DNA of 64,000 nucleotides, from positions 248,001 through 312,000 of IMG/VR virus record IMGVR_UViG_3300018080_008436. One strand, 5' to 3'. Shown here piece after piece: positions 1,835 to 60,861 of this stretch. The notes beneath the pieces are model-generated. The model had not been told where the DNA came from, made no database searches, and was given only the letters and a program-made list of their open reading frames with translations. How positions within the stretch are numbered: position 1 is the first letter of the stretch; each line of letters begins with the position of its first letter. The position numbers and the translations under genes were made by a program.

Positions 1835-3681
1835 TTTACCTCACGAATTATGAATATAAAATCTTCCTCTTTGGGTTCAATAACCTCGCACTTAGGGCAT
1901 TCAAAATCATTCTTCTTGTTTATTTTTTCACAAGTATCTGACCCACCATGTTCAAAACATAACATGGGATGAGGTTCTTCCTCAGGCATATTGGCGTTTT
2001 GTTCGACAATTTCTTGATCGATCTCAAACCCACCCTCATGTTCTTCAACATAGTCTTCCATTTGATCATCAGACCCAAAACACTCTTTCTCCTGATTAGC
2101 CGCTTCAACTTGCTTGATCTTCTCAGCAAGCTCACTAATTGGCCTTCTGCTATTGCCTTGAGTAAATCCATGATTTCTCTTAAAATTAGCGACTCCACCA
2201 AGATGAGGATCAAAACGGTTGCAGACAAAAAACATGTAAGTATCCTGACTTGGTACAGGCAATTTTCTCTCTCTTAAAAGTGAAACACAAAAACGAGTAA
2301 ATTTCGCCTTATGCAACTGAATAAAAGAAATAGTTCTTTTTGTGTTGTGATAAAATCTTCTGCCTTTTACTTCTCCCTCATCCATCATGGGTTTAGCGTT
2401 TTTAAGCTTTCGCCTCCAATGCCCAGTGGCCCATTTGTCAAGCTTTTTGATGTGTTCTGGTCTGCTATATGACCACTTATGGCCACAATAAGCGTATTTC
2501 TTCATATCTTCGTTGAATAATGGTTTGTCATTGGTCGCATAACTATCTGCATCCAATTTCAACCAATAATCTGTTTTGACATGTTCTGCTGTTCCAAAAA
2601 CAAACGCACTCAGCATTTCTTCTCTATGATCATCAGCTTCTGGGAAAGACCATGGAATTAATTTCACATTAGGAAGTTTAAGAAACTCTAACCTTTCGTC
2701 ATTCAGTTCCATCCCATTAACAAAAACCATAACAGGATATTTATCGATGTTTTTGTACTTTCTCCAGTTAGGAAATGTCAACCTAAGAAATTCTACATAT
2801 TTCTCATCACAGGCAGTAACAATTGTTACATCATCAATAATCCCATCTCTGACTTTCAAATATTTTCTAAGTCTTTTATCAGCATATTGAAGGTAATGGT
2901 TGATATTTGCTGTATTGTTTTCACACATCTCTTCGAATTCTTTCTTCCAATGATCGCAATTTGGAAAATCCAAACAATGCTTCTTACCATGGAAGTGGAC
3001 AACTCTCTTGTCCTCTACCTTTTCTCCAAACTTTACGCTAACATTGTATTTAATTGGGGCGATGTGGACTTTCAAACCCCACTCGTCAGCAGAGGGATAT
3101 AGAATCTGGAAGGCAACTTCATCTGGAATAAATATCCTGGCTTTAGATCCCTTGTGGGCCAGATTTACCCAATCAGTTACGAATTTCGTCCACTTCTTAG
3201 ACTTTCTGAACGAAAGGATGCCAGTGTTCACTGCTGGATTTTCCTCAAGAGCTTTCTTCATATGTCTTTCTTCAGCGATGCCGTCAAATTTCTTAACTCT
3301 TTTTGCCATTGTTCGGCCATTTGACTTCCATCCACAAAAATGAGGTATTGAAACATCTGCATCGTCAAGATAATCAAACATTTCATCAATACTACCTTTA
3401 AGAACCATATCAGAATCAAGCCAAAGTGTTCTGTCATAAGGAGGGTTAGCAAACATATCTGTTTTTCTGACAAGAGTTTTTAGTTCATGCTTCTCGTCAT
3501 TATGGATAATATCAACATTGTAATGCTTACAAACATCGTCAAATTCATGAGGGTAGGGATCTTCAAGATAAAACGTAATAGGGCCATCCCAGTGCCTTCT
3601 AATCGTTTCGAGAGCGACGATTGCTCGGACAATACATTGATCTCCCCTATTAAACATAATAATTCCGCGTGTTTCTTCCAT
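1831..3681 (-). CDS. Two-domain glycosyltransferase (GT8-like + second GT-A domain)
   Basis: LWLDSD...NTGI...DEVAF...HFHG and second WLKLDAD domain. Confidence 0.65.
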   Translation of the reverse strand: MEETRGIIMFNRGDQCIVRAIVALETIRRHWDGPITFYLEDPYPHEFDDVCKHYNVDIIHNDEKHELKTLVRKTDMFANPPYDRTLWLDSDMVLKGSIDEMFDYLDDADVSIPHFCGWKSNGRTMAKRVKKFDGIAEERHMKKALEENPAVNTGILSFRKSKKWTKFVTDWVNLAHKGSKARIFIPDEVAFQILYPSADEWGLKVHIAPIKYNVSVKFGEKVEDKRVVHFHGKKHCLDFPNCDHWKKEFEEMCENNTANINHYLQYADKRLRKYLKVRDGIIDDVTIVTACDEKYVEFLRLTFPNWRKYKNIDKYPVMVFVNGMELNDERLEFLKLPNVKLIPWSFPEADDHREEMLSAFVFGTAEHVKTDYWLKLDADSYATNDKPLFNEDMKKYAYCGHKWSYSRPEHIKKLDKWATGHWRRKLKNAKPMMDEGEVKGRRFYHNTKRTISFIQLHKAKFTRFCVSLLRERKLPVPSQDTYMFFVCNRFDPHLGGVANFKRNHGFTQGNSRRPISELAEKIKQVEAANQEKECFGSDDQMEDYVEEHEGGFEIDQEIVEQNANMPEEEPHPMLCFEHGGSDTCEKINKKNDFECPKCEVIEPKEEDFIFIIREVK

Positions 3682-4023: not shown

Positions 4024-4965
4024 CTACTGGAGATACCCTAGTTCTTCCAAAAGTGCCATGGCCCTTTCATTCTTTGTGAATTCATCAATTCTATCTTGAT
4101 GTTCTGACTTCTTCCATTTGCCAACTCTATTGGATGAGATCTTCTTTGCTTCCCCTGCCCAGGCATAATTAGTTTTTACATTAGTAGAATCCTGATAATC
4201 AACCAATTCTTTCTCATATGGGATACCTATATGAGAACATACCCTCTGCAATGTCTCTTCTGGCTTTATTACAAGATCTTCATATTTGACTATCATAGAG
4301 ATATCTTTAAATTCAAGACCCTTTGTAACATCATTAACCCATCGATCTATATCTACCCAATATTGCCCAGGATGATATGGATGAACCGATGTAGTAACAT
4401 CTCTTCCATCTCTTATCAAATGTATAAGCTTTACATCGCCCTTGAATATTTTATGAATTTCATCAAAAACTAAGATATTTTTAGGTGTCTTTTCACACCA
4501 GATCTTCCCATCCATGTCATGTCCGTCAAGCTCTCTTATGATTCTAATAAGTCTTGTTGGATTTGGATAAAAGGCAAAAAGTTCTTCATCAATGGCATGA
4601 ATCTTCTCATGAGCACCAAGTATACTAAGCAAAAGAGTAGTCCCTGATCTACCACACCCTCCAACAATAACTGGAGAACCATATTTCTTGAGAGCCTCTA
4701 CCTCTCGATACATCCAAGTGTTTATTGTACCAGATGAAACCATCTCTTTGAACAACTTGACAAACAACTCTGGATTATTCTCAGCAGGCTTTTCGTAAGA
4801 AACTCTCCATGAATCTCCCCAAAGCCATTTCCCTCCACTCTCAAAATGAACGAACTGCGAAGAAGCCCCTTCCTCTATCTTATATATTGACTCACCAGGA
4901 TGAGTATAATATTTATACGGTTCTATTGTAAGTACTTTGTCTATAGAAGCTTTGGTTATTTTCAT
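4024..4965 (-). CDS. Sulfotransferase
   Basis: GCGRSGTTLL, EKTPKN, LIRDGRDV, VKYEDLV motifs. Confidence 0.85.
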   Translation of the reverse strand: MKITKASIDKVLTIEPYKYYTHPGESIYKIEEGASSQFVHFESGGKWLWGDSWRVSYEKPAENNPELFVKLFKEMVSSGTINTWMYREVEALKKYGSPVIVGGCGRSGTTLLLSILGAHEKIHAIDEELFAFYPNPTRLIRIIRELDGHDMDGKIWCEKTPKNILVFDEIHKIFKGDVKLIHLIRDGRDVTTSVHPYHPGQYWVDIDRWVNDVTKGLEFKDISMIVKYEDLVIKPEETLQRVCSHIGIPYEKELVDYQDSTNVKTNYAWAGEAKKISSNRVGKWKKSEHQDRIDEFTKNERAMALLEELGYLQ

Positions 4966-5663
4966 TGCATCCTCACGAAACTGTCACAGAAGCCCCTTAA
5001 TCTTCTAAGATCTTCACAATCCATAGATCCCAGATGCCCCTTCTCATAATTTGCTTGCAACGATTTATCAAGAGTAAAGTGTTTTTCTACAACCTTAGCT
5101 CCGCGAACAACAGAAGCAATTGCCGCAGTTAATCCAAAAGTATGATCACTAAAACCCATGTATCTTGAGTTTTTAAAATCGCAATTTGGAATATCTTCTA
5201 AACGTGCTGGATAATCTGAGATACATAAAAAATAATGGACGTTATCTCCATCATATCGAAAATCATTCTGGTTAAAACCGTTAGATACATAGACTGGCTT
5301 GTTAGTTGCCATCACTTTATGACATAATGCCATGTCTTCAAAAGTTCGACTTGCTATCTTGTAACTGGAGAAGCTCAACTGTTCGCACCAATAGAATCTT
5401 TCCTCATCAAAAACGGAACAAAGAACCCCAAGGTCAATTGAATCGGCATATCTCTTGATTCTACTTAGCTCTGGTAATGTAATTTCAGCATACTTCTTTC
5501 TGTCATCACCAAATAGTCTTTGTGATGAATATAGTTGGAATTTCACCATATCTGCTCCAAATGTCTTGCATTGAAGCATCATACTAAATATCGCATCAAT
5601 CGATCCGCCATGTTGAGGATGCAGTTCTGCTATGATCTCAATTCTTTCGTTTTTTGGTTCCAT
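4962..5663 (-). CDS. neuB: N-acetylneuraminate (nonulosonate) synthase family, no C-terminal SAF domain
   Basis: IIAE..HGG, ADMVKFQ, YKIASR, GFSDHT, VEKHFTLD motifs. Confidence 0.85.
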   Translation of the reverse strand: MEPKNERIEIIAELHPQHGGSIDAIFSMMLQCKTFGADMVKFQLYSSQRLFGDDRKKYAEITLPELSRIKRYADSIDLGVLCSVFDEERFYWCEQLSFSSYKIASRTFEDMALCHKVMATNKPVYVSNGFNQNDFRYDGDNVHYFLCISDYPARLEDIPNCDFKNSRYMGFSDHTFGLTAAIASVVRGAKVVEKHFTLDKSLQANYEKGHLGSMDCEDLRRLRGFCDSFVRMQ

Positions 5664-24519: not shown

Positions 24520-25527
24520 TTAGTCGTAAACTACAACGAACATCTTTCCAGCAGGGCTAAAAGCTACTGCTGTATTTTCATCGTTATAGGTAGTTCCATT
24601 GAAATCGTTAATTACAGCAGGAATACCTTCTGTATTAACTTTAACCAATCTTGTGCCATTGGCCGCATTAGCATCAATAACGTAGAGGTTACCAGATGCA
24701 TCTACGGAGCAGTGACGAAGTTCGTTGTACTGACAGTTAAATGCAGTTGTTCCAAGAGCTTTCCCTGCAACTCCAGATCCAGAATGGAGATAAACCCATC
24801 CACGAGGAGTAATTTTCTTGATTTTGTAGTTGGCAGTATCACAAACAAATACATTACCATTCGCATCACAAGCAACGCCAAGAGGATTGTCGAAAAGAGT
24901 CTTTGCAGTAGTTGCAACATTTTCGCCGTCTCCAGCAGTATCACCTGCATAGGTATAAACCGTACCATCCTTAATTCTACGAATTGAGTCGTTACCTGAA
25001 TCGGCAACATAAACAGTACCACTTGGATCTACATCAACATCCCATGGAGTATCAAACTTAGCGGCTCCACCAACGCCATCAGTATGACCAGCTACGCCAC
25101 CACCGTCTCCAGCGAGAACGCTTACATAACCATCTCTGATAACTCTAATCTGGTTGTTTCCAGAATCAGCAACATAAATGTTACCACTGTTGTCGCAGGC
25201 CAAACCAACTGGAGCATTAAATCTAGCATCCAAAGCTGGGACGTTAGCCAATGTTCCGTTATCTCCTGAGGTTCCATCTTCTCCAGCGTAAAGAGAAACT
25301 CTTCCGCCTTCATCAATTTTGAGAATAGTATGTCTGTCTAAATCAGAGACATAGATATTACCACTATTGTCTACGCAAACACCAGATACAGAAACTGATC
25401 CTTTTGCAGTAAGCTGATTAGGGCCAGCTTCCAACTTAGCGGCAATCTCAGCATCTGTTAAGTTAACACCAAGAGCCGCAGTCGTTGCAAGATCGCTCTG
25501 AGTTATTCTAATTACACTATTAGCCAT
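24520..25527 (-). CDS. NHL-repeat beta-propeller protein
   Basis: Repeated FNAPVGLACDNSGNIYVADSGNNQIR units. Confidence 0.85.
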   Translation of the reverse strand: MANSVIRITQSDLATTAALGVNLTDAEIAAKLEAGPNQLTAKGSVSVSGVCVDNSGNIYVSDLDRHTILKIDEGGRVSLYAGEDGTSGDNGTLANVPALDARFNAPVGLACDNSGNIYVADSGNNQIRVIRDGYVSVLAGDGGGVAGHTDGVGGAAKFDTPWDVDVDPSGTVYVADSGNDSIRRIKDGTVYTYAGDTAGDGENVATTAKTLFDNPLGVACDANGNVFVCDTANYKIKKITPRGWVYLHSGSGVAGKALGTTAFNCQYNELRHCSVDASGNLYVIDANAANGTRLVKVNTEGIPAVINDFNGTTYNDENTAVAFSPAGKMFVVVYD

Positions 25528-25618
25528 TTTTATTCCTCCTAAAAACCATTTAAGGATTCATTCGTTTTCTTATTCTAGAAAACTTTTTGTTCTTCCTTTC
25601 TCACTTTACATTTTTTAT

Positions 25619-26953
25619 TTAGAGTCTGTTAGCCGCCTCTTCAGACAGCAATGATCTTACTCCATCTCTAAGAATAACATGGGCAGAGTTACTTGAATCT
25701 TTGAACGCATCCAATACAACTGAAAGACCATTTGTCCTACGATCCAAATATGGGTTATCTATCTGTTCAATATCACCAGTTAGAATAACCTTTGTATTCT
25801 CTCCCGCTCTTGTTATGATCGTTTTTATCTCAAGTGGAGTAAGATTTTGAGCTTCATCGATAATGATATATTGATTATGAATACTCCTACCTCTTATATA
25901 AGTTAGAGGCTCAATAAAGATTTTATCACTAAGCTCAGCTATCTTTTTCCCACTCATCTTCTTCTGACCCTTTTTCTCAGGTGATTTTGCTTTATTACTA
26001 TGAACAATCTCCAAAGCATCATAAATGGGTTGCATCCATGGGTCTAACTTCTCATTCACATCTCCTGGTAAAAAACCAATATCTCGACCCATTGGTTGAA
26101 CAGGTCTACTAATGAGCATTTTTTCATACCTTTCTTCCTGCTCTACCATATATTCACCAGCGGCTGTTGCAAGCAAGGTCTTCCCAGTCCCTGCCATTCC
26201 TACCAAACATACCAAATGGATATCATCATCTAACAATGCATCCAAAGCAAAAGCTTGCTCTCTATTTTTTGATTTAATCTTTAATGATGGAGGTAAAAAA
26301 TCTAATCTCTCTACCATAGATCTGTCCTTACTGACTCTGGCAAGCATATTTTTGCTTTCATCTGGACTTTGGACCATTAGGTAGTAATTGCCCCAAGGAA
26401 TGTCATCATCATCAAATACCCACTCTACAGGACATTCATCCTTTAGTTTAATTTCAGCATATGTTTTTCTATTAACCTCAACAGTACGGAATCCTTCATC
26501 AAGAATAACACTTTCGCATACTCTGGTTGCTTCATAGCATTCAGCCCTGATCCCAAGAGCATTCGCTTTCAGTCTAACGTTAATATCTCTTGAAATAACT
26601 ATACACTCATTCTCTGGCTCTTGAGCCTTCATAATATCTGCAATATGAAGTACATGAAAATCGACATCCTTCTCCTTTCTATAGGTTCCTAAGTTGCCAT
26701 TATAAATAACTCTTATTTGACCTTCCCTATCATCTCCTAATCTAACCCCTTTTCTTAAATCCCCCAATTCTCTGAATTTGTCGAGTGATCTAGAAACTTG
26801 ACGGGAGTTTCGCCCTAACGCCCCATTGTCTCTTTTGAATGTGTCTAGCTCTTCAATCACTCCGATTGGAATAATCACAGTATGTTCCTCAAAACTGAAT
26901 ATCGCTTCAGGATCTTGCAACAGAACATTTGTGTCAATAACGAAATTTTTCAT
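25619..26953 (-). CDS. phoH: PIN-PhoH ATPase (PhoH2/YlaK-like)
   Basis: VIDTNVLL PIN; GMAGTGKT, RGRS, DEAQN, TGDIEQID. Confidence 0.93.
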   Translation of the reverse strand: MKNFVIDTNVLLQDPEAIFSFEEHTVIIPIGVIEELDTFKRDNGALGRNSRQVSRSLDKFRELGDLRKGVRLGDDREGQIRVIYNGNLGTYRKEKDVDFHVLHIADIMKAQEPENECIVISRDINVRLKANALGIRAECYEATRVCESVILDEGFRTVEVNRKTYAEIKLKDECPVEWVFDDDDIPWGNYYLMVQSPDESKNMLARVSKDRSMVERLDFLPPSLKIKSKNREQAFALDALLDDDIHLVCLVGMAGTGKTLLATAAGEYMVEQEERYEKMLISRPVQPMGRDIGFLPGDVNEKLDPWMQPIYDALEIVHSNKAKSPEKKGQKKMSGKKIAELSDKIFIEPLTYIRGRSIHNQYIIIDEAQNLTPLEIKTIITRAGENTKVILTGDIEQIDNPYLDRRTNGLSVVLDAFKDSSNSAHVILRDGVRSLLSEEAANRL

Positions 26954-34010: not shown

Positions 34011-34138
34011 ATGAGTCGGAAGGAATCGAACCTTCATTCCCTGGTTGATTTATTAAACATCAAATAGTTGCTGGAACGAAACTTATACAGTTTCACTTGG
34101 TTTTATGTCCAGGAGTTCTACCATTAAACTACGACCCA
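34011..34138 (-). ncRNA. tRNA-like RNA whose anticodon loop is replaced by a ~65-nt insert with CAGCAA module
   Basis: Intact acceptor, D and T arms, CCTGG/CCAGG stem, no encoded CCA. Confidence 0.7.
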
Positions 34139-53804: not shown

Positions 53805-53880
53805 TGGGCTACTCGACGGATCTTGAAACCGCAACCTCCAGGGCCACAACCTAGCGCTCTGCCTTTGAGCTACGAGTAGC
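53805..53880 (-). tRNA. tRNA-His(GTG)
   Basis: G-1:C73, loop TTGTGGC. Confidence 0.88.
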
Positions 53881-53891
53881 ATCAAATTGGT

Positions 53892-54563
53892 CTATCCCAA
53901 CCATTTGTCTCTTTTAAATCCACCTATTTCTTGAATGCCTCCCATAATTTTTTGTTTTATTTCAACGCTGTGTAATCTTACTGTGCAAATTCCGTATTTT
54001 AGTTTACCCTGAAATTCGCTAGATTTAAAATAACATTTTCTCAAATTTTCTTTCGTCAAACTAAGTGCATTAAGCCAAAATTCAACAATCTCTTGTTCAG
54101 AAACTCCATTGTTTGTATAGGCATTTATAGAAAGAGCAAATCTTTTTTCTTCAAACTCAAAGTGTTCTCTAAGGAACTTCATAAAAAGAATCATCATGTC
54201 AATATCGCTATTGCAGAATGTCACTCCTTTATTGGATTCTTTTGTTCCTTCTGCCCAATAAAGAATACAGCCAACCCGAAAACTTTCAGATATTTTAGCA
54301 AGTGCTCTTCCATCAGTTTGCCACTTCCTTCTTTTTCTTCTGAATTTTTCCGAATATTTCTCCTGTTTACCAAAATAACCACCTTTTCTTGTTTTTGTCC
54401 TGTGCCGCAATTTTAGGTTTTCTATTTGTTCTTTCGTTAGTTGAATATCTCGAACCCATAAACTAACAGACGATTGAGACACATCTAGAATCTTGGCTAT
54501 TTTCTTTATAGATTGTCCACTTTTTCTTAGTTCTCTTGCTTTGTTTCTTTCGACTTTTTTCAT
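53892..54563 (-). mobile_element. HTH + single-motif LAGLIDADG-like endonuclease inside tRNA operon
   Basis: SIKKIAKILDVSQSSVSLW HTH; ILYWAEGTK..FCNSD; start trimmed to MKKVE. Confidence 0.6.
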
Positions 54564-54621
54564 TTTCGAACCCCCATAGTTATATGTGATATAACATATT
54601 ATACAGCAAGTTCGAACTTTT

Positions 54622-54696
54622 TGGTAGCAGTATCGGGACTTGAACCCGAACGGCACTCCTTATGAAAGAGTCGCACTACCATTATGCTATACTGCT
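54622..54696 (-). tRNA. tRNA-Met or Ile2 (CAT)
   Basis: Loop TTCATAA, CCA. Confidence 0.85.
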
Positions 54697-54750
54697 ATGA
54701 AAGTCTTGGGCTAACCATTGCCCAACCTAGCGTCATTTATCGTATCCAAT

Positions 54751-54825
54751 TGGCGGTGATAAGGGGAATCGAACCCCTGTCCTCTGGGCGACAACCAGAA
54801 ATCCTAGCCATTAAACGATATCACC
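54751..54825 (-). tRNA. tRNA-Asp(GTC)
   Basis: Loop TTGTCGC, G73, CCA. Confidence 0.9.
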
Positions 54826-54831
54826 GATAAG

Positions 54832-54905
54832 CGGAACCGAAGGGACTCGAACCCTCAATCTCCTGATCGACAGTCAGGGGCACTAACCAATTGCGCTACG
54901 GCTCC
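54832..54905 (-). tRNA. tRNA-Asp(GTC), CCA not encoded
   Basis: Loop CTGTCGA. Confidence 0.88.
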
Positions 54906-55023
54906 ATAAAACTGAAAGCTCTAAAGTTTTCGTTAGTCTTTTTGCTTTCGCTCATACTCCTATACTCTTTATTGTCCAATCCAGTTGTCAATTGGCTCTA
55001 AGGAACGATACGAACTTTCAGTT

Positions 55024-55100
55024 TGGTGACGACAGTTGGACTTGAACCAACGCTCTCCAGTGTGTCGAACTGGCGATTTATCCATCTAATCTATGCCGTC
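55024..55100 (-). tRNA. tRNA-Val(GAC), C33
   Basis: Loop TCGACAC, CCA. Confidence 0.8.
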
Positions 55101-55104
55101 AATT

Positions 55105-55182
55105 TGGTTCTGCGAGAGGGACTTGAACCCCCGACCTCCTCCTTATCAGGGAGGCGCTACTTACCATCTGAGCTACCGCAGA
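55105..55182 (-). tRNA. tRNA-Ile(GAT)
   Basis: Loop CTGATAA, CCA. Confidence 0.9.
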
Positions 55183-55187
55183 ATCAT

Positions 55188-55278
55188 TGGTGGGAGTAGC
55201 AGGACTTGAACCTGCGTTTACCTTTCGGCCTCCTGTGTATCAGACAGGCGCTCTAACCAAATACTGAGCTATACTCCC
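55188..55278 (-). tRNA. tRNA-Ile(GAT) with long variable arm
   Basis: Loop CTGATAC; GCC-GAAA-GGT arm; CCA. Confidence 0.85.
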
Positions 55279-55338
55279 ATAACATTCTTTTTGCATTGTA
55301 ACATCATCAATGTTATCGTGCAAATTTGATGTTACAAT

Positions 55339-55413
55339 TGGCAGGGACGAAAGGATTTGAACCCTTACCGCATGGTTTTGGAGACCAGCAGGCTACCATT
55401 ACAACACGCCCCT
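55339..55413 (-). tRNA. tRNA-Trp(CCA)
   Basis: Loop CTCCAAA, G73. Confidence 0.9.
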
Positions 55414-55418
55414 GTTAG

Positions 55419-55494
55419 TGGTACTCCTACCAGAACTCGAACCTGGATCTTCGACTTCGAAGGCCGTTATTCTAATCCATTGAACTATAGGAGC
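55419..55494 (-). tRNA. tRNA-Arg(TCG)
   Basis: Loop CTTCGAA. Confidence 0.88.
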
Positions 55495-55528
55495 ATCTAC
55501 ATATAAATTTTCAAAGAACTCTAATTCT

Positions 55529-55605
55529 TGGTACACCCAGCAGGATTTGAACCTGCAACCTCCTGGTTCGTAGCCAGACGCTCTATCCAATTGAGCTATG
55601 AGTGC
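55529..55605 (-). tRNA. tRNA-Arg(ACG)
   Basis: Loop CTACGAA. Confidence 0.93.
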
Positions 55606-55610
55606 AACTT

Positions 55611-55687
55611 TGGTACTCCTGGCGGGACTCGAACCCACATAGACCTGTTTAGAAGACAGGTGCCTGATCCAGTTAGACTACAGGAGC
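55611..55687 (-). tRNA. tRNA-Arg(TCT)
   Basis: Loop CTTCTAA. Confidence 0.92.
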
Positions 55688-55854
55688 ATCTAAAATTATT
55701 TCAACTTTTCTTTCGCTTTTTTCAAATCCTCAATTAACTGTTTCTTTGAGTAGTTTCTGCCTACCCAAACTAATTCATACATTTTCTCGTCTTTTTGATT
55801 CTGAACACTGTTCAGAACTCGTTCTAAAATCTCTTGTGCTGTTTCTTTCATTTT

Positions 55855-55929
55855 TGGCCTCTCCTATAGGACTCGAACCTATATCTGCGGTTTAGGAAAC
55901 CGATATTCTATCCCTTGAACTAAGGAGAG
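55855..55929 (-). tRNA. tRNA-Arg(CCT)
   Basis: Loop TTCCTAA. Confidence 0.9.
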
Positions 55930-58823: not shown

Positions 58824-58916
58824 AATTGATCTCCTTCGTTGCAGAAACATTATTCTATATAGAAAAAGAAAAACCCTAGAGCGGGGAACTCTAGGGCTTT
58901 TCAGGTGGGCCGAATC

Positions 58917-60350
58917 TTAGACGGTGACCCCTTCTGGGACTACGATTTCATACTTCTCGATTGCTCGATCAAGTACTGCCATTGGCGAGAAATCAGTGCC
59001 TCCGAGAACTGCGCCTAAGATTGAAGGACTGAAGCCACTTACAAGAGCAACATTCTCATGCGTACCTCTTGCAGGACTTCCTGCATATCCAGCAGTATTC
59101 CAATATACAATCTTTGGACGACTGTATCCATTTGCTTCCCACTCTTCCATGCATCTTTCAATAGTGGTCTTATCGCAGTTACTAGCGCCAGAGCACCAGC
59201 CTCCACCATTATCGAACTGCATGTCTGAAATGATCAACAGACAGTTTGGAATCTGTTCATCAGTTACGTTGAACATCTTTGCAGAGTTCAGGATCTGATC
59301 AAGAGCCGCCTTGACGTTCGTTGATCCACAATATCCTTCTCTTCTGCAACGCTGAATTCCCTGAACAAAAGTCTTTCCCTTCCAATCGACAAGGTGACTG
59401 TCGTTTGAGAATGGAATGAACTTCCTGTAGAAAGGGTTATCCTTTCCAACCCTGTCAGAGCAGTACAATCCCAAACTGGTTGAGATATCAATAGCTCTGA
59501 TAGAACCAGAGACAGTAACTCCCATAGATCCAGAGAAGTCACAAATTGGCATGATTCTCATGTTGCAGTCTTCCATGAAGTTTGGAAGAGCTTCAAACTG
59601 AGCATTTGCCAACTTACCATCCTTGTTAGCAGTACGAAGAACGTCATGTGGGAACAAAGCACTTGCGTTAACCTTGTTGTCAGAGTCCTCGTCAGTCAAA
59701 GACTCTCTCCACTGATCGTATCTTGCAGGATCATGCTTCAAGAATGCGTTAGCAGATCTTGCCATTGCGACAGAAGGAACAGTGTTGTAGTCAATGTCAT
59801 GCCAGTCGCCTGAGCACATTGCAGTCTCTACAACATTAGTGTACTCAGCCAAGTGCTTTCTGAATACCTTTGGAGACATTCCGAGAGCCTTTCTAAGCTT
59901 TGCGAAAACAACCTTGTTCTTCTTCTCTCTTGGTGCCCACTTGCAAGCAAGACCATGCTTATCAGCAATAGCTCTTGCCCAGTACTGGATTGCAGTATCT
60001 TCGCAAGGAGTATCGATACATGCAGTCAAGTCATCCCAACGTCCAGTCTCTGGAATAAGATGAATATTGACAGTAATCCACTCAGGATGCTTCTCAGCCA
60101 TCCACTTCAATACAGAACGGAATCCGCTTCTGTTACCTGCTCCACCTCTAGCATCACGAAGCCAGAAAGCAAGCTTTGCGGCACGAAGTTGATCGGACTT
60201 GAACGCAGGCTTAAACAAGTTCAGAGCACCTGCCTCCGAACCGTAGTAGCTACCACGCTTCTCGAAAAGTGATCCTGCCTTGGAGAAGAACTCCAAAAGT
60301 GCGTTTCCAGTTGAGTCATACAGAAAGTCGTTGTTGTGTCCTCTTGCCAT
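58917..60350 (-). CDS. TROVE-like DUF2828 + vWA protein
   Basis: WLRDARGGAG, GRWDDL, KWAPRE, VPSVAM, CDFSGSM MIDAS, ISDMQFD, VYWN, VSGFSP. Confidence 0.8.
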   Translation of the reverse strand: MARGHNNDFLYDSTGNALLEFFSKAGSLFEKRGSYYGSEAGALNLFKPAFKSDQLRAAKLAFWLRDARGGAGNRSGFRSVLKWMAEKHPEWITVNIHLIPETGRWDDLTACIDTPCEDTAIQYWARAIADKHGLACKWAPREKKNKVVFAKLRKALGMSPKVFRKHLAEYTNVVETAMCSGDWHDIDYNTVPSVAMARSANAFLKHDPARYDQWRESLTDEDSDNKVNASALFPHDVLRTANKDGKLANAQFEALPNFMEDCNMRIMPICDFSGSMGVTVSGSIRAIDISTSLGLYCSDRVGKDNPFYRKFIPFSNDSHLVDWKGKTFVQGIQRCRREGYCGSTNVKAALDQILNSAKMFNVTDEQIPNCLLIISDMQFDNGGGWCSGASNCDKTTIERCMEEWEANGYSRPKIVYWNTAGYAGSPARGTHENVALVSGFSPSILGAVLGGTDFSPMAVLDRAIEKYEIVVPEGVTV

Positions 60351-60381
60351 CGTACCATCCTCCTATTGTTGGTTTTGTGTC

Positions 60382-60447
60382 AAAAAAAAGACCAGTCAAA
60401 CTTGGTTCCGAGTCCCATCTCGCGTATGGAACAAAGTCTAACTGGTC
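60382..60447 (-). terminator. Long hairpin + T8 between RNA array and TROVE-like gene
   Basis: GACCAGTTAGACTT..AAGTTTGACTGGTC-T8. Confidence 0.75.
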
Positions 60448-60460
60448 AAAGTTAAAAATC

Positions 60461-60818
60461 GGAACAGGTTAGCAATTTTGGTTTTCATTTCAAGTGAAAG
60501 TTTTGGTTGCTGTAACTAACCTTCTATCCTAAATTAAAAATTTGAACAGACTGACTTGTTTTTTTTAGCATAAAAAATTTTGAGTTGCTGAATGCAGTCT
60601 TATATCAAATTGTTTTTCTAAATTTTCCTTTTTCTTGTTTTCAAAGAAACAAGTGAAACAGCTTGGGTTTTCCATCCTTTATTTCAGACCTCGATGAATT
60701 TGGGTCCTCAAATTTATTTTTAAAACCCTCTCGACTGGGTTCTCGTTTTATTTCTGTCAGGGCGACTCTGACGCTCGTTTTATCGTGTTTTTTGGTTGCA
60801 GTAACCAAGCTTTATTCA
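60461..60818 (-). ncRNA. Array of three structured RNA units with helix-(C/T)AGCAA-type motif
   Basis: Units 60461..60529, 60540..60610, 60654..60818 with covarying stems; third has ACTGCAA. Confidence 0.7.
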
Positions 60819-60830
60819 GTTGTTGGTTCC

Positions 60831-60861
60831 ATTATAAGGATTACGAAAAACTTTTCAAGTC
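60831..60861 (-). promoter_or_regulatory. Promoter GACTTGAAA-N16-TATAAT
   Basis: Shared motif. Confidence 0.8.

What the first reader, a model, noticed from the sequence alone, without database searches (positions are those of the whole stretch)
58917..60861. TROVE-like (DUF2828-vWA) gene preceded by a promoter-driven, terminated array of structured RNA repeats
Seen (minus strand): three units share outer stem, ATA/AGA bulge, helix, 3-4 nt, CAGCAA (ACTGCAA in one), variable loop, helix complement, GT, outer stem. The helices are AGCTTGG/CCAAGCT, AGACTG/CAGTCT and AGGTTAG/CTAACCT, so they covary. The loops hold 5-bp hairpins resembling anticodon arms (TTTCA-CTTGAAA-TGAAA; GTCAG-AGTCGCC-CTGAC). 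A T8 terminator separates the array from the CDS. Known: Ro60/Rsr TROVE-vWA proteins bind Y RNAs encoded next to them and act in RNA decay/repair. Inference: these are cognate ncRNAs of the protein, possibly displaying anticodon-like decoys, and/or an autoregulatory leader.
Basis: partly seen in the sequence, partly recalled or inferred. Interest (0 to 1): 0.85.

Follow-up and report, generated by a model that had tools for sequence, protein, structure and literature searches.

The report
Phage Ro60-like protein with partner RNAs
A giant phage encodes a ring-shaped Ro60-like RNA-binding protein just downstream of three small structured RNAs that share a hallmark (short helix plus UUACAGCAA), and this undescribed RNA family sits beside the same protein gene in very diverse phages, so it is probably their version of the Ro60/Y-RNA particle.

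Summary
On the minus strand, a near-consensus promoter drives three structured units (60650-60821, 60538-60611, 60456-60532). A 20-bp hairpin plus T8 follows, then SD/ATG of a 477-aa DUF2828+DUF7788 protein. There are three units, not six.

The protein models confidently (pLDDT 92). Its only full-length structural matches are Ro60/Rsr/TROVE, and its vWA MIDAS motif is invariant.

Each unit is a frame: outer stem, AUAA bulge, 6-7 bp helix (AGG.../...CCU), UUACAGCAA, variable interior, GU(U). Helix covariation is decisive (97% paired, 7/7 pairs with double changes).

A covariance model finds the frame next to DUF2828 genes in:
- 39 of 80 distant viral loci
- many of 65 genome loci
- cultured Felix O1-like, Listeria P100-like, Campylobacter, Staphylococcus and Enterococcus phages (manually in a mycobacteriophage)

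Every hit is on the gene strand, and 61 of 63 lie within 800 nt. No Rfam family reaches threshold.

19% of interiors carry anticodon-arm-like hairpins (0.6% in shuffles). One mycobacteriophage interior matches YrlA.

Best reading: a new Y-RNA-like class partnering a divergent phage Ro60. Binding and function are untested. The frame also resembles Dictyostelium Class I RNAs.

The parts
60831..60858 (-). Sigma-70-type promoter of the RNA array: -35 TTGAAA 60858-60853, -10 TATAAT 60836-60831. The predicted start near 60824 is about 3 nt before unit 1.
   Evidence: 11 of 12 matches. The same TTGAAA-17-TATACT/TATAAT is present in L098, L100 and L101.
60650..60821 (-). Unit 1, a long frame. Outer stem CAACTGAA/TTCACTTG, TAA bulge, helix AGCTTGG/CCAAGCT, TTACTGCAA (60804-60796), and a ~115-nt multi-hairpin interior, then GT.
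   Evidence: R1 scored it 34.4 bits although it was not in the seed. R2 scored it 47.8 bits. Orthologous units in L098, L100 and L101 carry compensatory helix changes.
60538..60611 (-). Unit 2, a short frame. Outer stem AATTTGA/TCAAATT, TATA bulge, helix AGACTG/CAGTCT, CATT-CAGCAA (60590-60585), AU-rich interior, then GT.
   Evidence: R2 69.5 bits. Rfam Dicty_Class_I_RNA 20.6 bits.
60456..60532 (-). Unit 3, a short frame. Outer stem GGA/TCC, TAGA bulge, helix AGGTTAG/CTAACCT, TTACAGCAA (60515-60507), then GT. The interior holds the anticodon-arm-like hairpin TTTCA-CTTGAAA-TGAAA (60499-60483).
   Evidence: R2 57.2 bits. Anticodon-arm test. Rfam Dicty_Class_I_RNA 22.9 bits.
60382..60447 (-). Intrinsic terminator: a 20-bp hairpin (60447-60390) plus T8 (60389-60382). 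It ends the sRNA transcript. Read-through is the only evident route to the CDS.
   Evidence: -28.3 kcal/mol, z = -5.9. Relatives have a hairpin plus T-run of unrelated sequence at the same place. The Rfam Y_RNA hit here is only 16 bits, E 2.3.
58917..60364 (-). SD AGGAGG (60364-60359) and the CDS 60350-58917: a 477-aa Ro60-like protein with an N-terminal helical DUF2828/TROVE-fold part and a C-terminal vWA domain (DUF7788). MIDAS residues are D271, S273, S275, T344 and D376.
   Evidence: PHROG 850 'RNA-binding protein', 1.9e-103.
58868..58902 (-). Terminator-like hairpin plus T-run directly after the CDS stop codon.
   Evidence: 15 pairs, 6 G-C, T-rich tail.

Best explanation
The 477-aa gene encodes a divergent phage Ro60 (TROVE-fold ring plus vWA/MIDAS). 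The roughly 440-nt unit upstream is its partner-RNA operon.

How it is laid out:
- A strong sigma-70 promoter starts transcription about 3 nt before unit 1.
- Three RNAs follow, each built on one frame: a 6-7 bp closing helix beginning AGG and ending CCU, a single-stranded UUACAGCAA directly 3' of the 5' strand, and GU(U) after the 3' strand. This sits inside a weaker outer stem with an AUAA bulge.
- A stable terminator ends most transcripts. Read-through supplies the protein's mRNA, so RNA is made in excess over protein.

Inferred steps:
- The invariant frame is the protein's recognition site. It would be the analogue of the bulged helix of Y RNAs, but with a different sequence.
- The variable interiors are effector modules: AU-rich loops, anticodon-arm mimics, T-arms, and in one mycobacteriophage a YrlA-type tRNA-like domain.
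- The modules would tether or decoy enzymes that recognise tRNA, in tRNA/RNA quality control or in countering host tRNA- or RNA-directed defence.

Shown here: the fold, MIDAS, RNA covariation and genomic linkage. Inferred: binding, processing into separate RNAs, and function.
For: Protein:
- AF2 model pLDDT 92.2, pTM 0.91.
- The Foldseek top 12 are all full-length Ro60/Rsr/TROVE, E 5.7e-9 to 1.6e-6, TM up to 0.62, including phage phiLo Ro60. The next hits are vWA domains only.
- Invariant DxSxS..T..D.

RNA:
- Inner helix 92% paired with 6 of 7 double-change pairs in 11 seed units.
- 97.4% paired and 7 of 7 in 39 units, covariation 0.545 against 0.158 shuffled (0 of 500), slid controls at or below 49%.

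Linkage:
- 79 R2 hits in the DUF2828 loci, all on the gene strand.
- 63 hits fall in 39 of 80 distant loci. 61 of 63 are within 800 nt of the gene against 17% expected, P about 3e-44.
- 27 hits, all on the gene strand, in 65 independent genome loci.
- With R1, 89 control loci gave nothing above 21.4 bits.
- L071 was found by the RNA motif alone, and turned out to hold a DUF2828 gene flanked by at least 6 units.
- Cultured phages: Felix O1-like VpaE1 has 4 units in tRNA-array gaps, Listeria LMSP-25 and cka15 have 3, Campylobacter CPX 1, Staphylococcus 2, Enterococcus 1.

Bridge to Y RNAs: in a mycobacteriophage, three CAGCAA frames follow the gene, and the middle interior matches Rfam YrlA at 39.8 bits, E 1.2e-6.

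tRNA mimicry:
- Anticodon-arm-like hairpins in 13 of 67 interiors against 0.6% in shuffles.
- T-arms in 3 units.
- An Rfam tRNA hit inside L071 unit 4.
- tRNA genes are 2.7-fold enriched nearby, and 117 of 118 are co-oriented with the gene.

Expression and phenotype in relatives:
- CKA15's most transcribed non-coding regions lie within 2 kb upstream of its homolog. The units fill one of only two unannotated gaps there besides ROOL, behind a TTGACA-17-TG-TATCAT promoter (PMC12282133).
- Bas63 gp130 is Ro60-like and needed against the Ppl defence (preprint 10.1101/2024.10.10.617714).
Against: - There is no binding data for any member.
- No RNA run was listed for this locus.
- The CM finds units in only about half of the distant DUF2828 loci. 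KVP40 and phage OC show nothing convincing within 3 kb, at most 14 bits.
- Some units (L086, L060) have no DUF2828 gene in the fetched piece.
- Thermodynamic z-scores of single units are weak.
- The frame does not resemble the known Ro60 site (bulged helix, GNCGAA). Pfam TROVE is not matched by sequence in any of 36 family members.
- In the mycobacteriophage unit, the YrlA-type stem and the frame helix are mutually exclusive, so the frame might not be the binding site.
- The mapping of CKA15's 'highly transcribed regions' onto the units is inferred. The paper gives coordinates for only one region, and that one is the ROOL RNA.
Confidence: 0.62

Rival explanations
1. Cis-acting autoregulatory leader. 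The frames are operator sites in the 5' leader of the protein's own mRNA. The protein binds them to control terminator read-through or translation, and no trans-acting RNP function exists.
For: In the window there is no promoter between the T8 terminator and the SD, so the CDS depends on read-through from the array promoter. L105 and L108 carry one minimal unit immediately before the SD with no terminator. In cka15 no terminator separates the units from the gene.
Against: 38 of 63 hits in distant loci lie downstream of the gene. Felix O1-like units sit among tRNA genes after the gene. There are up to 6 units per locus (L071, L114). The interiors are elaborate and variable, with tRNA-like, YrlA-like or anticodon-arm-like modules. 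A strong terminator precedes the CDS here. This rival could coexist with the main model.
Confidence: 0.15
2. Independent phage small RNAs or tRNA-operon-associated elements (processing signals, tRNA-like decoys, sRNA regulators with a CAGCAA seed). They share an 'RNA module' neighbourhood with the DUF2828 gene but do not bind it.
For: Units are embedded in tRNA polycistrons in Felix O1-like phages. tRNA genes are enriched near the gene. L086 and L060 have units without a nearby DUF2828 gene. ROOL RNA, RtcB, RNA ligase and CCA-adding enzyme genes cluster in the same regions.
Against: 64 of 80 DUF2828 loci have no tRNA within 5 kb, yet many of them have units. Adjacency to the DUF2828 gene persists across phages of unrelated lineages and hosts while the rest of the neighbourhood changes. 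Precedent: Ro60 orthologs bind the ncRNAs encoded beside them (PMC4201824, PMC12135203).
Confidence: 0.15
3. Type III toxin-antitoxin-like module. A promoter-driven array of RNA repeats, separated by a terminator from a protein gene, acts as an antitoxin that neutralises the protein.
For: The layout promoter, RNA array, terminator, protein gene is the ToxIN layout (established knowledge). It would also make RNA in excess over protein.
Against: The units are not sequence repeats. The protein has a Ro60 fold, not a ToxN/AbiE-type endoribonuclease fold. There is no PADLOC hit. In most relatives the units lie downstream or lack the terminator.
Confidence: 0.03
4. Chance stem-loops or a repeated DNA element (such as a miniature mobile element) with no RNA-level function.
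For: AT-rich intergenic DNA folds easily, and the single-unit z-scores are only -1.4 and -1.9.
Against: Compensatory changes occur in all 7 helix pairs across 38 distinct sequences, and the slide controls collapse. Strand polarity relative to the gene is absolute: 79 of 79 and 27 of 27 hits. There is no DNA repeat identity between units.
Confidence: 0.01

Closest known systems
Bacterial and phage Ro60 (Rsr) with Y RNAs: YrlA/YrlB, D. radiodurans Yrn1, Thermus phage phiLo Yrl1/Yrl2
   Same: A ring-plus-vWA Ro60-fold protein. One to several ncRNAs are encoded adjacent to it on the same strand. The RNAs are modular: a conserved closing stem plus a variable or tRNA-like module. One mycobacteriophage unit contains a YrlA-type T-arm/acceptor/D-arm module. 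Links to tRNA genes, RtcB and RNA ligase echo the rsr-yrlBA-rtcBA operon (PMC4201824).
   Different: The protein belongs to Pfam DUF2828/DUF7788, and none of 36 family members matches TROVE by sequence. The conserved RNA element is a 6-7 bp helix plus a single-stranded UUACAGCAA and CCUGU, not the bulged helix with the GNCGAA motif. The Rfam Y_RNA and YrlA models do not detect the window units. Most units are only 58-96 nt and lack a tRNA-like domain.
Dictyostelium Class I RNAs (Rfam RF01414)
   Same: A short covarying stem joins the ends, the motif (CC)UUACAGCAA follows the 5' stem strand directly, the interior is variable, the 3' end is a conserved CUGU, and the length is about 60 nt (PMC7919456). 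The dictyostelid-only Rfam model hits four phage units and nothing else in the searched DNA: 22.9, 20.6, 32.3 and 23.1 bits.
   Different: All scores are below the gathering score of 41.5. Class I RNAs are eukaryotic genes with a DUSE promoter and are described as restricted to Dictyostelia. The known direct binder is the RRM protein CIBP/Rnp1A. The phage units are polycistronic and embedded in an outer stem. No link to a DUF2828/Ro60-like protein is known in dictyostelids, and I could not test for one.
Type III toxin-antitoxin loci (ToxIN-like)
   Same: The gene order is promoter, array of structured RNA units, terminator, protein gene, which gives an excess of RNA over protein.
   Different: The units are not sequence repeats. 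The protein is Ro60-like rather than an endoribonuclease toxin. The layout is not conserved in relatives.

Membership tests
Ro60/TROVE protein family | Alpha-helical (HEAT-like) ring domain followed by a vWA domain | tested here: met
   AF2 model pLDDT 92.2. The Foldseek top 12 hits are all full-length Ro60/Rsr/TROVE, E 5.7e-9 to 1.6e-6, TM 0.50-0.62.
Ro60/TROVE protein family | MIDAS motif (DxSxS...T...D) in the vWA domain | tested here: met
   D271, S273, S275, T344 and D376 are invariant in 36 homologs.
Ro60/TROVE protein family | Sequence match to Pfam TROVE (PF05731) or to solved Ro60 sequences | tested here: not met
   None of 36 family members matches TROVE at E<=1. phmmer against the PDB finds nothing. 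The profile against 1yvp gives E 0.53, on the vWA part only.
Ro60/TROVE protein family | Binds Y RNA and misfolded RNA | not testable with these tools
   This needs RIP or EMSA.
Y RNA / YrlA (Rfam RF00019, RF02553) | Encoded next to, and on the same strand as, the Ro60-type gene | tested here: met
   Window. 61 of 63 hits lie within 800 nt of the gene, and all are on the gene strand.
Y RNA / YrlA (Rfam RF00019, RF02553) | Long 5'/3' stem carrying the conserved Ro-binding bulged helix or GNCGAA motif, and a covariance-model match | tested here: not met
   Rfam Y_RNA scores only 16 bits (E 2.3), and on the terminator. There is no YrlA hit in the window array. The conserved element is UUACAGCAA beside a short helix.
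Y RNA / YrlA (Rfam RF00019, RF02553) | A tRNA-like domain (T-arm, D-arm, acceptor-like stem) in at least one RNA per genome | tested here: inconclusive
   The window units have no T-loop and no ARAGORN call. Relatives do: YrlA 39.8 bits inside a frame in L188, a tRNA hit of 35 bits inside an L071 unit, and a T-arm in a Felix O1-like unit. Anticodon-arm-like hairpins occur in 19% of units, including window U3.
Dictyostelium Class I RNA (RF01414) | Short terminal stem, an 11-nt CCUUACAGCAA motif after the 5' strand, and a 3' CUGU | tested here: inconclusive
   9 of the 11 motif nucleotides, the stem and the CUGU are present. Rfam scores are 20.6-32.3 bits, below the gathering score of 41.5.
Dictyostelium Class I RNA (RF01414) | Dictyostelid gene with a DUSE promoter about 60 nt upstream | tested here: not met
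   This is a bacterial-type promoter in a phage genome.
Type III toxin-antitoxin | Tandem near-identical RNA repeats upstream of an endoribonuclease toxin | tested here: not met
   TRF finds no repeat across the units. The protein has a Ro60 fold. There is no PADLOC match.

The most novel reading that the evidence does not exclude
The helix-UUACAGCAA...CUGU frame may be a recognition module shared from phages to social amoebae. On this reading, dictyostelid Class I RNAs (abundant, developmentally regulated, mechanism unknown, reported as unique to Dictyostelia) are the eukaryotic counterpart of these phage RNAs. They would work as Y-RNA-like partners of a Ro60-like/DUF2828-type protein, or of another shared binder. 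One candidate is the uncharacterised pull-down protein DDB_G0281243. The shared module could have arisen by ancient homology, by transfer from a phage or giant virus, or by convergence on one binding site.
Probability: 0.12. Interest if true: 0.92.

Novelty: new variant of a known kind. Interest (0 to 1): 0.74.

Why it matters
Ro60/Y-RNA particles are known from animals, about 5% of bacteria and a few phages. Their RNA partners have been found only where the protein is recognisably TROVE.

- **Scope.** A much larger phage family (Pfam DUF2828/DUF7788, PHROG 850; about 700 cultured phage genomes and thousands of metagenomic proteins) has its own conserved partner-RNA signature, absent from Rfam.
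- **Published puzzles it may explain.** One is the extremely abundant non-coding transcripts next to the Rsr-like gene of Listeria P100-like phages. Another is the unannotated gaps and spurious small ORFs in the tRNA regions of Felix O1-like, Staphylococcus and other therapeutic phages. A third is where the 'Y RNAs' of Bas63 gp130, a counter-defence factor against Ppl, should be sought: in the spacers, not in the tRNA genes.
- **Function.** The anticodon-arm and tRNA-like interiors point to tRNA mimicry in the phage-host conflict over tRNAs.
- **Tools.** The motif gives a handle (a covariance model and point mutants) for direct tests in tractable phages.
- **Class I RNAs.** The resemblance to dictyostelid Class I RNAs suggests a new hypothesis for a long-unexplained eukaryotic RNA class.

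Tried and rejected
- **Megablast of the locus against cultured phages:** no match. The window is an uncultured jumbo phage, identical to two IMG/VR contigs of 296 and 476 kb.
- **A 16-mer motif scan of viral contigs:** 93 hits, almost all chance. Only L071 and the window's own genome passed the structural filter.
- **Single-sequence and profile HMM searches of the PDB:** uninformative. Only the fold comparison worked.
- **First structure job:** I rebuilt the alignment without those rows.
- **The long terminal hairpin as a Y RNA:** rejected. The Rfam hit is 16 bits, and relatives have unrelated hairpin sequences followed by T-runs.
- **PF04308 RNase H-like gene as an obligate partner:** rejected. 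Only 2 of 80 distant loci have it.
- **tRNA adjacency as obligate:** rejected. Only 16 of 80 loci have a tRNA within 5 kb.
- **Pairing between ACAG of the motif and the 3' CUGU:** I considered this by eye on the alignment and dropped it, because there is no consistent covariation.
- **Transcript evidence for the window:** none was listed.
- **Whether dictyostelids encode a DUF2828/TROVE-like protein, and what DDB_G0281243 is:** not answerable with the tools or the library.
- **Bas63's own sequence:** not examined. I only showed that the unit-bearing stretch is at least 94% identical in over 200 Felixounavirus genomes, including Felix O1.
Full report
**1. What is in the window**

The window is part of an uncultured jumbo phage. 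It is identical to IMG/VR contigs of 296 and 476 kb, has no close cultured relative, and carries about 20 tRNA genes in two minus-strand clusters.

On the minus strand, the 537-nt gap between two ORFs holds the following elements:
- A promoter-like site: TTGAAA (60858-60853), 16 nt, TATAAT (60836-60831), 11 of 12 matches.
- Three structured units.
- A 20-bp hairpin (60447-60390) followed by T8 (60389-60382), at -28.3 kcal/mol and z = -5.9.
- AGGAGG (60364-60359), then the ATG at 60350 of a 477-aa ORF that ends at 58917. That ORF has its own terminator-like hairpin at 58902-58868.

A full-sensitivity covariance-model scan finds exactly three units in the 64 kb, not six. TRF finds no DNA-level repeat across them.

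**2. The protein is a divergent Ro60**

- Pfam gives DUF2828 (1.7e-26) and DUF7788 (5.3e-31). PHROGs gives phrog_850 'RNA-binding protein' (1.9e-103). PADLOC gives nothing.
- Sequence searches of the PDB fail, and none of 36 family members matches Pfam TROVE at E<=1.
- An AlphaFold2 model built on 36 homologs is confident: pLDDT 92.2, pTM 0.91.
- The 12 best Foldseek matches are all full-length Ro60/Rsr/TROVE structures, including Xenopus Ro60, D. radiodurans Rsr and Thermus phage phiLo Ro60 (E 5.7e-9 to 1.6e-6, TM up to 0.62). Everything below them is a vWA domain alone.
- The vWA MIDAS residues D271, S273, S275, T344 and D376 are invariant.
- The family is large: 4264 proteins at E<=1e-10 among the scored candidates, and tblastn hits in 695 cultured phage records. 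These include KVP40-like Vibrio, Felix O1-like, Listeria, Staphylococcus, Enterococcus, Campylobacter, Bacillus and Mycobacterium phages. Some are annotated 'Ro-like' or 'RNA-binding protein'.

**3. The RNA units are a conserved, covarying family**

Relatives at 65-80% protein identity (L098, L100, L101) keep the same layout: promoter, three units, hairpin plus T-run, SD and ATG. Their orthologous helices carry compensatory changes:

| Unit | Window | Relative |
|---|---|---|
| U1 | AGCTTGG/CCAAGCT | AGATTGG/CCAATCT |
| U2 | AGACTG/CAGTCT | AGACTAG/CTAGTCT |
| U3 | AGGTTAG/CTAACCT | AAGTTAG/CTAACTT |

Pair counts:
- On 11 short units, the two-helix structure is 84% paired against 69% in shuffles (0 of 500). 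The inner helix is 92% paired, with double changes in 6 of 7 pairs. Slid controls fall to 25-49%.
The covariation score is 0.545 against 0.158 (0 of 500). This alignment was fitted to the model, which favours the structure, but the slide controls and the seed result agree.

The consensus is ..UAA-AGGNNNN-UUACAGCAA(A/C)-interior-NNNNCCU-GU(U)... The middle four helix pairs take at least 15 different complementary forms.

**4. The RNA family travels with the gene**

- A scan of viral contigs for a 16-mer from the motif returned mostly chance hits. The one locus that passed my structural filter, L071, turned out to encode a DUF2828 protein (33% identity) flanked by at least six units and interspersed tRNAs.
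- Model R1 gave 55 hits (E<1) in 895 kb of DUF2828 loci, all on the gene strand. In 791 kb of unrelated viral loci it gave 6 hits, none above 21.4 bits.
- Model R2 gave 79 hits (E<0.1), again all on the gene strand. In the 80 distant viral loci (35-54% protein identity), 63 hits fall in 39 loci. 61 of the 63 lie within 800 nt of the gene, where 17% would be expected (P about 3e-44, though some loci are near-duplicates). 25 lie upstream and 38 downstream.
- In 65 loci from an independent genome collection there were 27 hits, all on the gene strand and next to the gene.
- Reading by eye shows that the model misses minimal or very AT-rich units in L105, L108 and L117, so these fractions are lower bounds.
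- Exceptions: KVP40 and phage OC show nothing convincing within 3 kb. L086 and L060 have good units but no DUF2828 gene in the fetched piece. Both were pre-selected for the motif and are partial contigs.

**5. Cultured phages**

With filters off, R2 finds the following:

| Phage | Units | Position |
|---|---|---|
| Felix O1-like VpaE1 | 4 | unannotated gaps of the tRNA array directly after the gene |
| Listeria LMSP-25 | 3 | directly before the gene |
| Campylobacter CPX | 1 | directly before the gene |
| Enterococcus VRE9_4 | 1 | directly before the gene |
| Staphylococcus S-CoN_Ph10 | 2 | directly after the gene, under two tiny 'hypothetical protein' calls |

- Rfam at gathering thresholds sees only tRNAs in these loci.
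- The VpaE1 stretch is at least 94% identical in more than 200 Felixounavirus genomes, including Felix O1.
- tRNA genes are 2.7-fold enriched within 5 kb of DUF2828 genes, and 117 of 118 are co-oriented with the gene. Only 16 of 80 loci have one, however.
- RtcB, an RNA ligase and a CCA-adding enzyme gene lie nearby in some phages.

**6. A bridge to known Y RNAs**

In mycobacteriophage OhShagHennessy, three frames follow the gene and precede a terminator:
- TGAGCGC-AGA-CAGCAA...GCGCTCA-GTT
- GGACTC-TAG-CAGCAA...GAGTCC-AGTT
- GGTCAC-GAA-CAGCAA...GTGACC-AGT

The interior of the middle frame matches Rfam YrlA at 39.8 bits (E 1.2e-6, gathering score 69), with a T-arm, an acceptor-like stem and a D-arm. 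So a recognised tRNA-like Y-RNA module can sit inside the CAGCAA frame.

In that unit the stem used by the YrlA model (ACUCC/GGAGU) and the frame helix (GGACUC/GAGUCC) exclude each other. It is therefore open which one the protein reads.

Chen et al. 2014 searched only genomes annotated as TROVE. They describe a GNCGAA-type Ro-binding motif (PMC4201824). The phiLo Ro60 paper uses a CGAA bulge (PMC12135203). Neither motif is the one found here.

**7. The interiors**

- Of 75 units, 58 are 58-96 nt long and 17 are 116-274 nt.
- ARAGORN calls no complete tRNA inside any unit.
- Three units carry canonical T-arms. One L071 interior scores 35 bits with Rfam tRNA.
- Hairpins with a stem of at least 4 bp and a 7-nt loop with U at position 2 and a purine at position 6 occur in 13 of 67 interiors, against 0.6% of shuffled interiors. 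The loops read CUUGAAA (three times, including window U3), CUCAUAA (twice), CUCAAAA, CUUGUAA, CUUCUAA and CUGAAAA. Seven nt is the most common loop size.
The plain MFE of U3 prefers a 4-bp/tetraloop alternative, though, and the U1 hairpin does not fit the rule.

**8. Expression and phenotype in relatives (literature)**

*Listeria phage CKA15.* Three non-coding regions have the deepest RNA-seq coverage of the genome. They have strong sigma-A promoters and lie within 2 kb upstream of CKA15_055, in the same direction. CKA15_055 was matched to Rsr by HHpred and was also detected in virions. The authors suggested 'Y RNAs' but defined none (PMC12282133).

I mapped their only stated interval (26,236-26,727) to a ROOL RNA hit. 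I also found the three units at about 25,280-25,560, in the 395-nt unannotated gap directly upstream of CKA15_055, behind TTGACA-17-TG-TATCAT and with no terminator before the gene. That the units are one of the other two regions is an inference.

*E. coli phage Bas63.* gp130 is structurally Ro60-like and is needed to overcome the Ppl defence. The authors guessed that some annotated tRNAs downstream are its Y RNAs (preprint 10.1101/2024.10.10.617714). My results point to the unannotated spacers instead. I did not examine Bas63's own sequence.

No RNA run was listed for the window itself.

**9. Mechanism**

Shown here:
- A Ro60-fold protein with an intact MIDAS.
- A covarying RNA frame.
- Obligate polarity of the frame and its adjacency to the gene.
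- A promoter and a terminator bracketing the window array.
- No room for a promoter before the CDS.

Inferred:
- The frame is the protein's binding site.
- The array is processed into three RNAs.
- The terminator sets an excess of RNA over protein.
- The interiors act as tRNA-mimicking effector or decoy modules in RNA quality control or counter-defence.

The main rival is a purely cis-acting autoregulatory leader, which fits L105 and L108. It does not fit the majority of units, which lie downstream of the gene. The two models may coexist.

**10. Resemblance to Dictyostelium Class I RNAs**

At permissive thresholds, Rfam's only recurrent non-tRNA hit on the units is Dicty_Class_I_RNA:
- window U3 22.9 bits and U2 20.6 bits
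- L101 unit 2 at 32.3 bits, and a Listeria phage unit at 23.1 bits

All four coincide with units, none lies elsewhere, and all are below the gathering score of 41.5.

Class I RNAs are defined by a short covarying stem joining the ends, an 11-nt motif after the 5' strand (CCUUACAGCAA in the Rfam consensus), a variable interior and a conserved 3' CUGU. They are described as restricted to Dictyostelia (PMC7919456). The phage frame shares the stem, UUACAGCAA and CUGU.

The proteins pulled down with Class I RNA are GuaB, NdkC, CIBP and the uncharacterised DDB_G0281243. I could not determine whether any dictyostelid protein is DUF2828- or TROVE-like. This is a lead, not a finding.

**11. Verdict**

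The Ro60/Y-RNA principle is known, and two papers had already guessed at Y RNAs near homologs of this gene. So this is a new variant of a known kind: an undescribed, widespread partner-RNA family with a distinct recognition signature for a divergent phage Ro60 family. It is directly testable in several model phages.

Noticed in passing
L186:2401-2952 (Listeria phage LMSP-25), equivalent to cka15 record 26,236-26,727 (L193 about 2737-3228): A ROOL RNA hit (Rfam RF03087, 88.5 bits, E 2e-16, just under the gathering score of 99.1) lies about 1 kb upstream of the DUF2828 gene. It coincides with the most highly transcribed region reported for phage CKA15, which is annotated there as three tiny CDSs (CKA15_059-061).
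   Followed up: partly
window:62399-62890 (-): A PF04308 RNase H-like (DUF458) protein (E 7e-25) lies 2 kb upstream on the same strand. The same family neighbours the DUF2828 gene in KVP40, L100, L101, L103 and L140/L142, but in only 2 of 80 distant loci. The association is therefore restricted to certain lineages.
   Followed up: yes
window:29066-34856 and 53805-55929 (-): Two clusters totalling about 20 tRNA genes, all on the minus strand, with several duplicated isoacceptors. Rfam reports a 128-nt tRNA match at 34011-34138 (46.7 bits) that ARAGORN does not call. It may be an interrupted or unusual tRNA.
   Followed up: no
L189:5450-5703 (Staphylococcus phage S-CoN_Ph10); Felix O1 AF320576.1 23534-24856: Tiny annotated 'hypothetical protein' or 'unknown' CDSs lie over the RNA units. 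They are probably mis-annotations of non-coding RNA genes.
   Followed up: partly
L086:9733-9810 and 2836-2954; L060:975-1248: Good matches to the unit model (40.2, 33.1 and 33.9 bits) on viral contig pieces where tblastn finds no DUF2828 gene. Either the gene lies outside the fetched piece or the units can occur apart from it.
   Followed up: partly
L105:about 4930-4985; L108:about 4915-4990: A single minimal unit sits inside the 5' leader, ending a few nucleotides before the Shine-Dalgarno sequence of the DUF2828 gene, with no terminator. This layout suggests autoregulation. The covariance model missed both units.
   Followed up: partly
window:60864-60889: A 13-nt AT-rich unit (TTTTGAATATTTT) is repeated twice immediately upstream of the -35 hexamer of the array promoter, in the position of an UP element.
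   Followed up: no
window:56221-56736 (-): An ORF with an OGFr_N (opioid growth factor receptor N-terminal) domain (E 3.5e-13) lies between the DUF2828 gene and the tRNA array. It is syntenic in L098 and L099.
   Followed up: no
L185:6826-7009 (Escherichia phage VpaE1): A weak match to permuted tmRNA (32.5 bits, E 0.008, below gathering) in a gap of the tRNA array near the units.
   Followed up: no
L193:196-1716 (cka15 CKA15_055): According to PMC12282133, the DUF2828/Ro60-like protein was detected in purified virions (20 peptides, 57% coverage). It may therefore be packaged and delivered with the genome.
   Followed up: no
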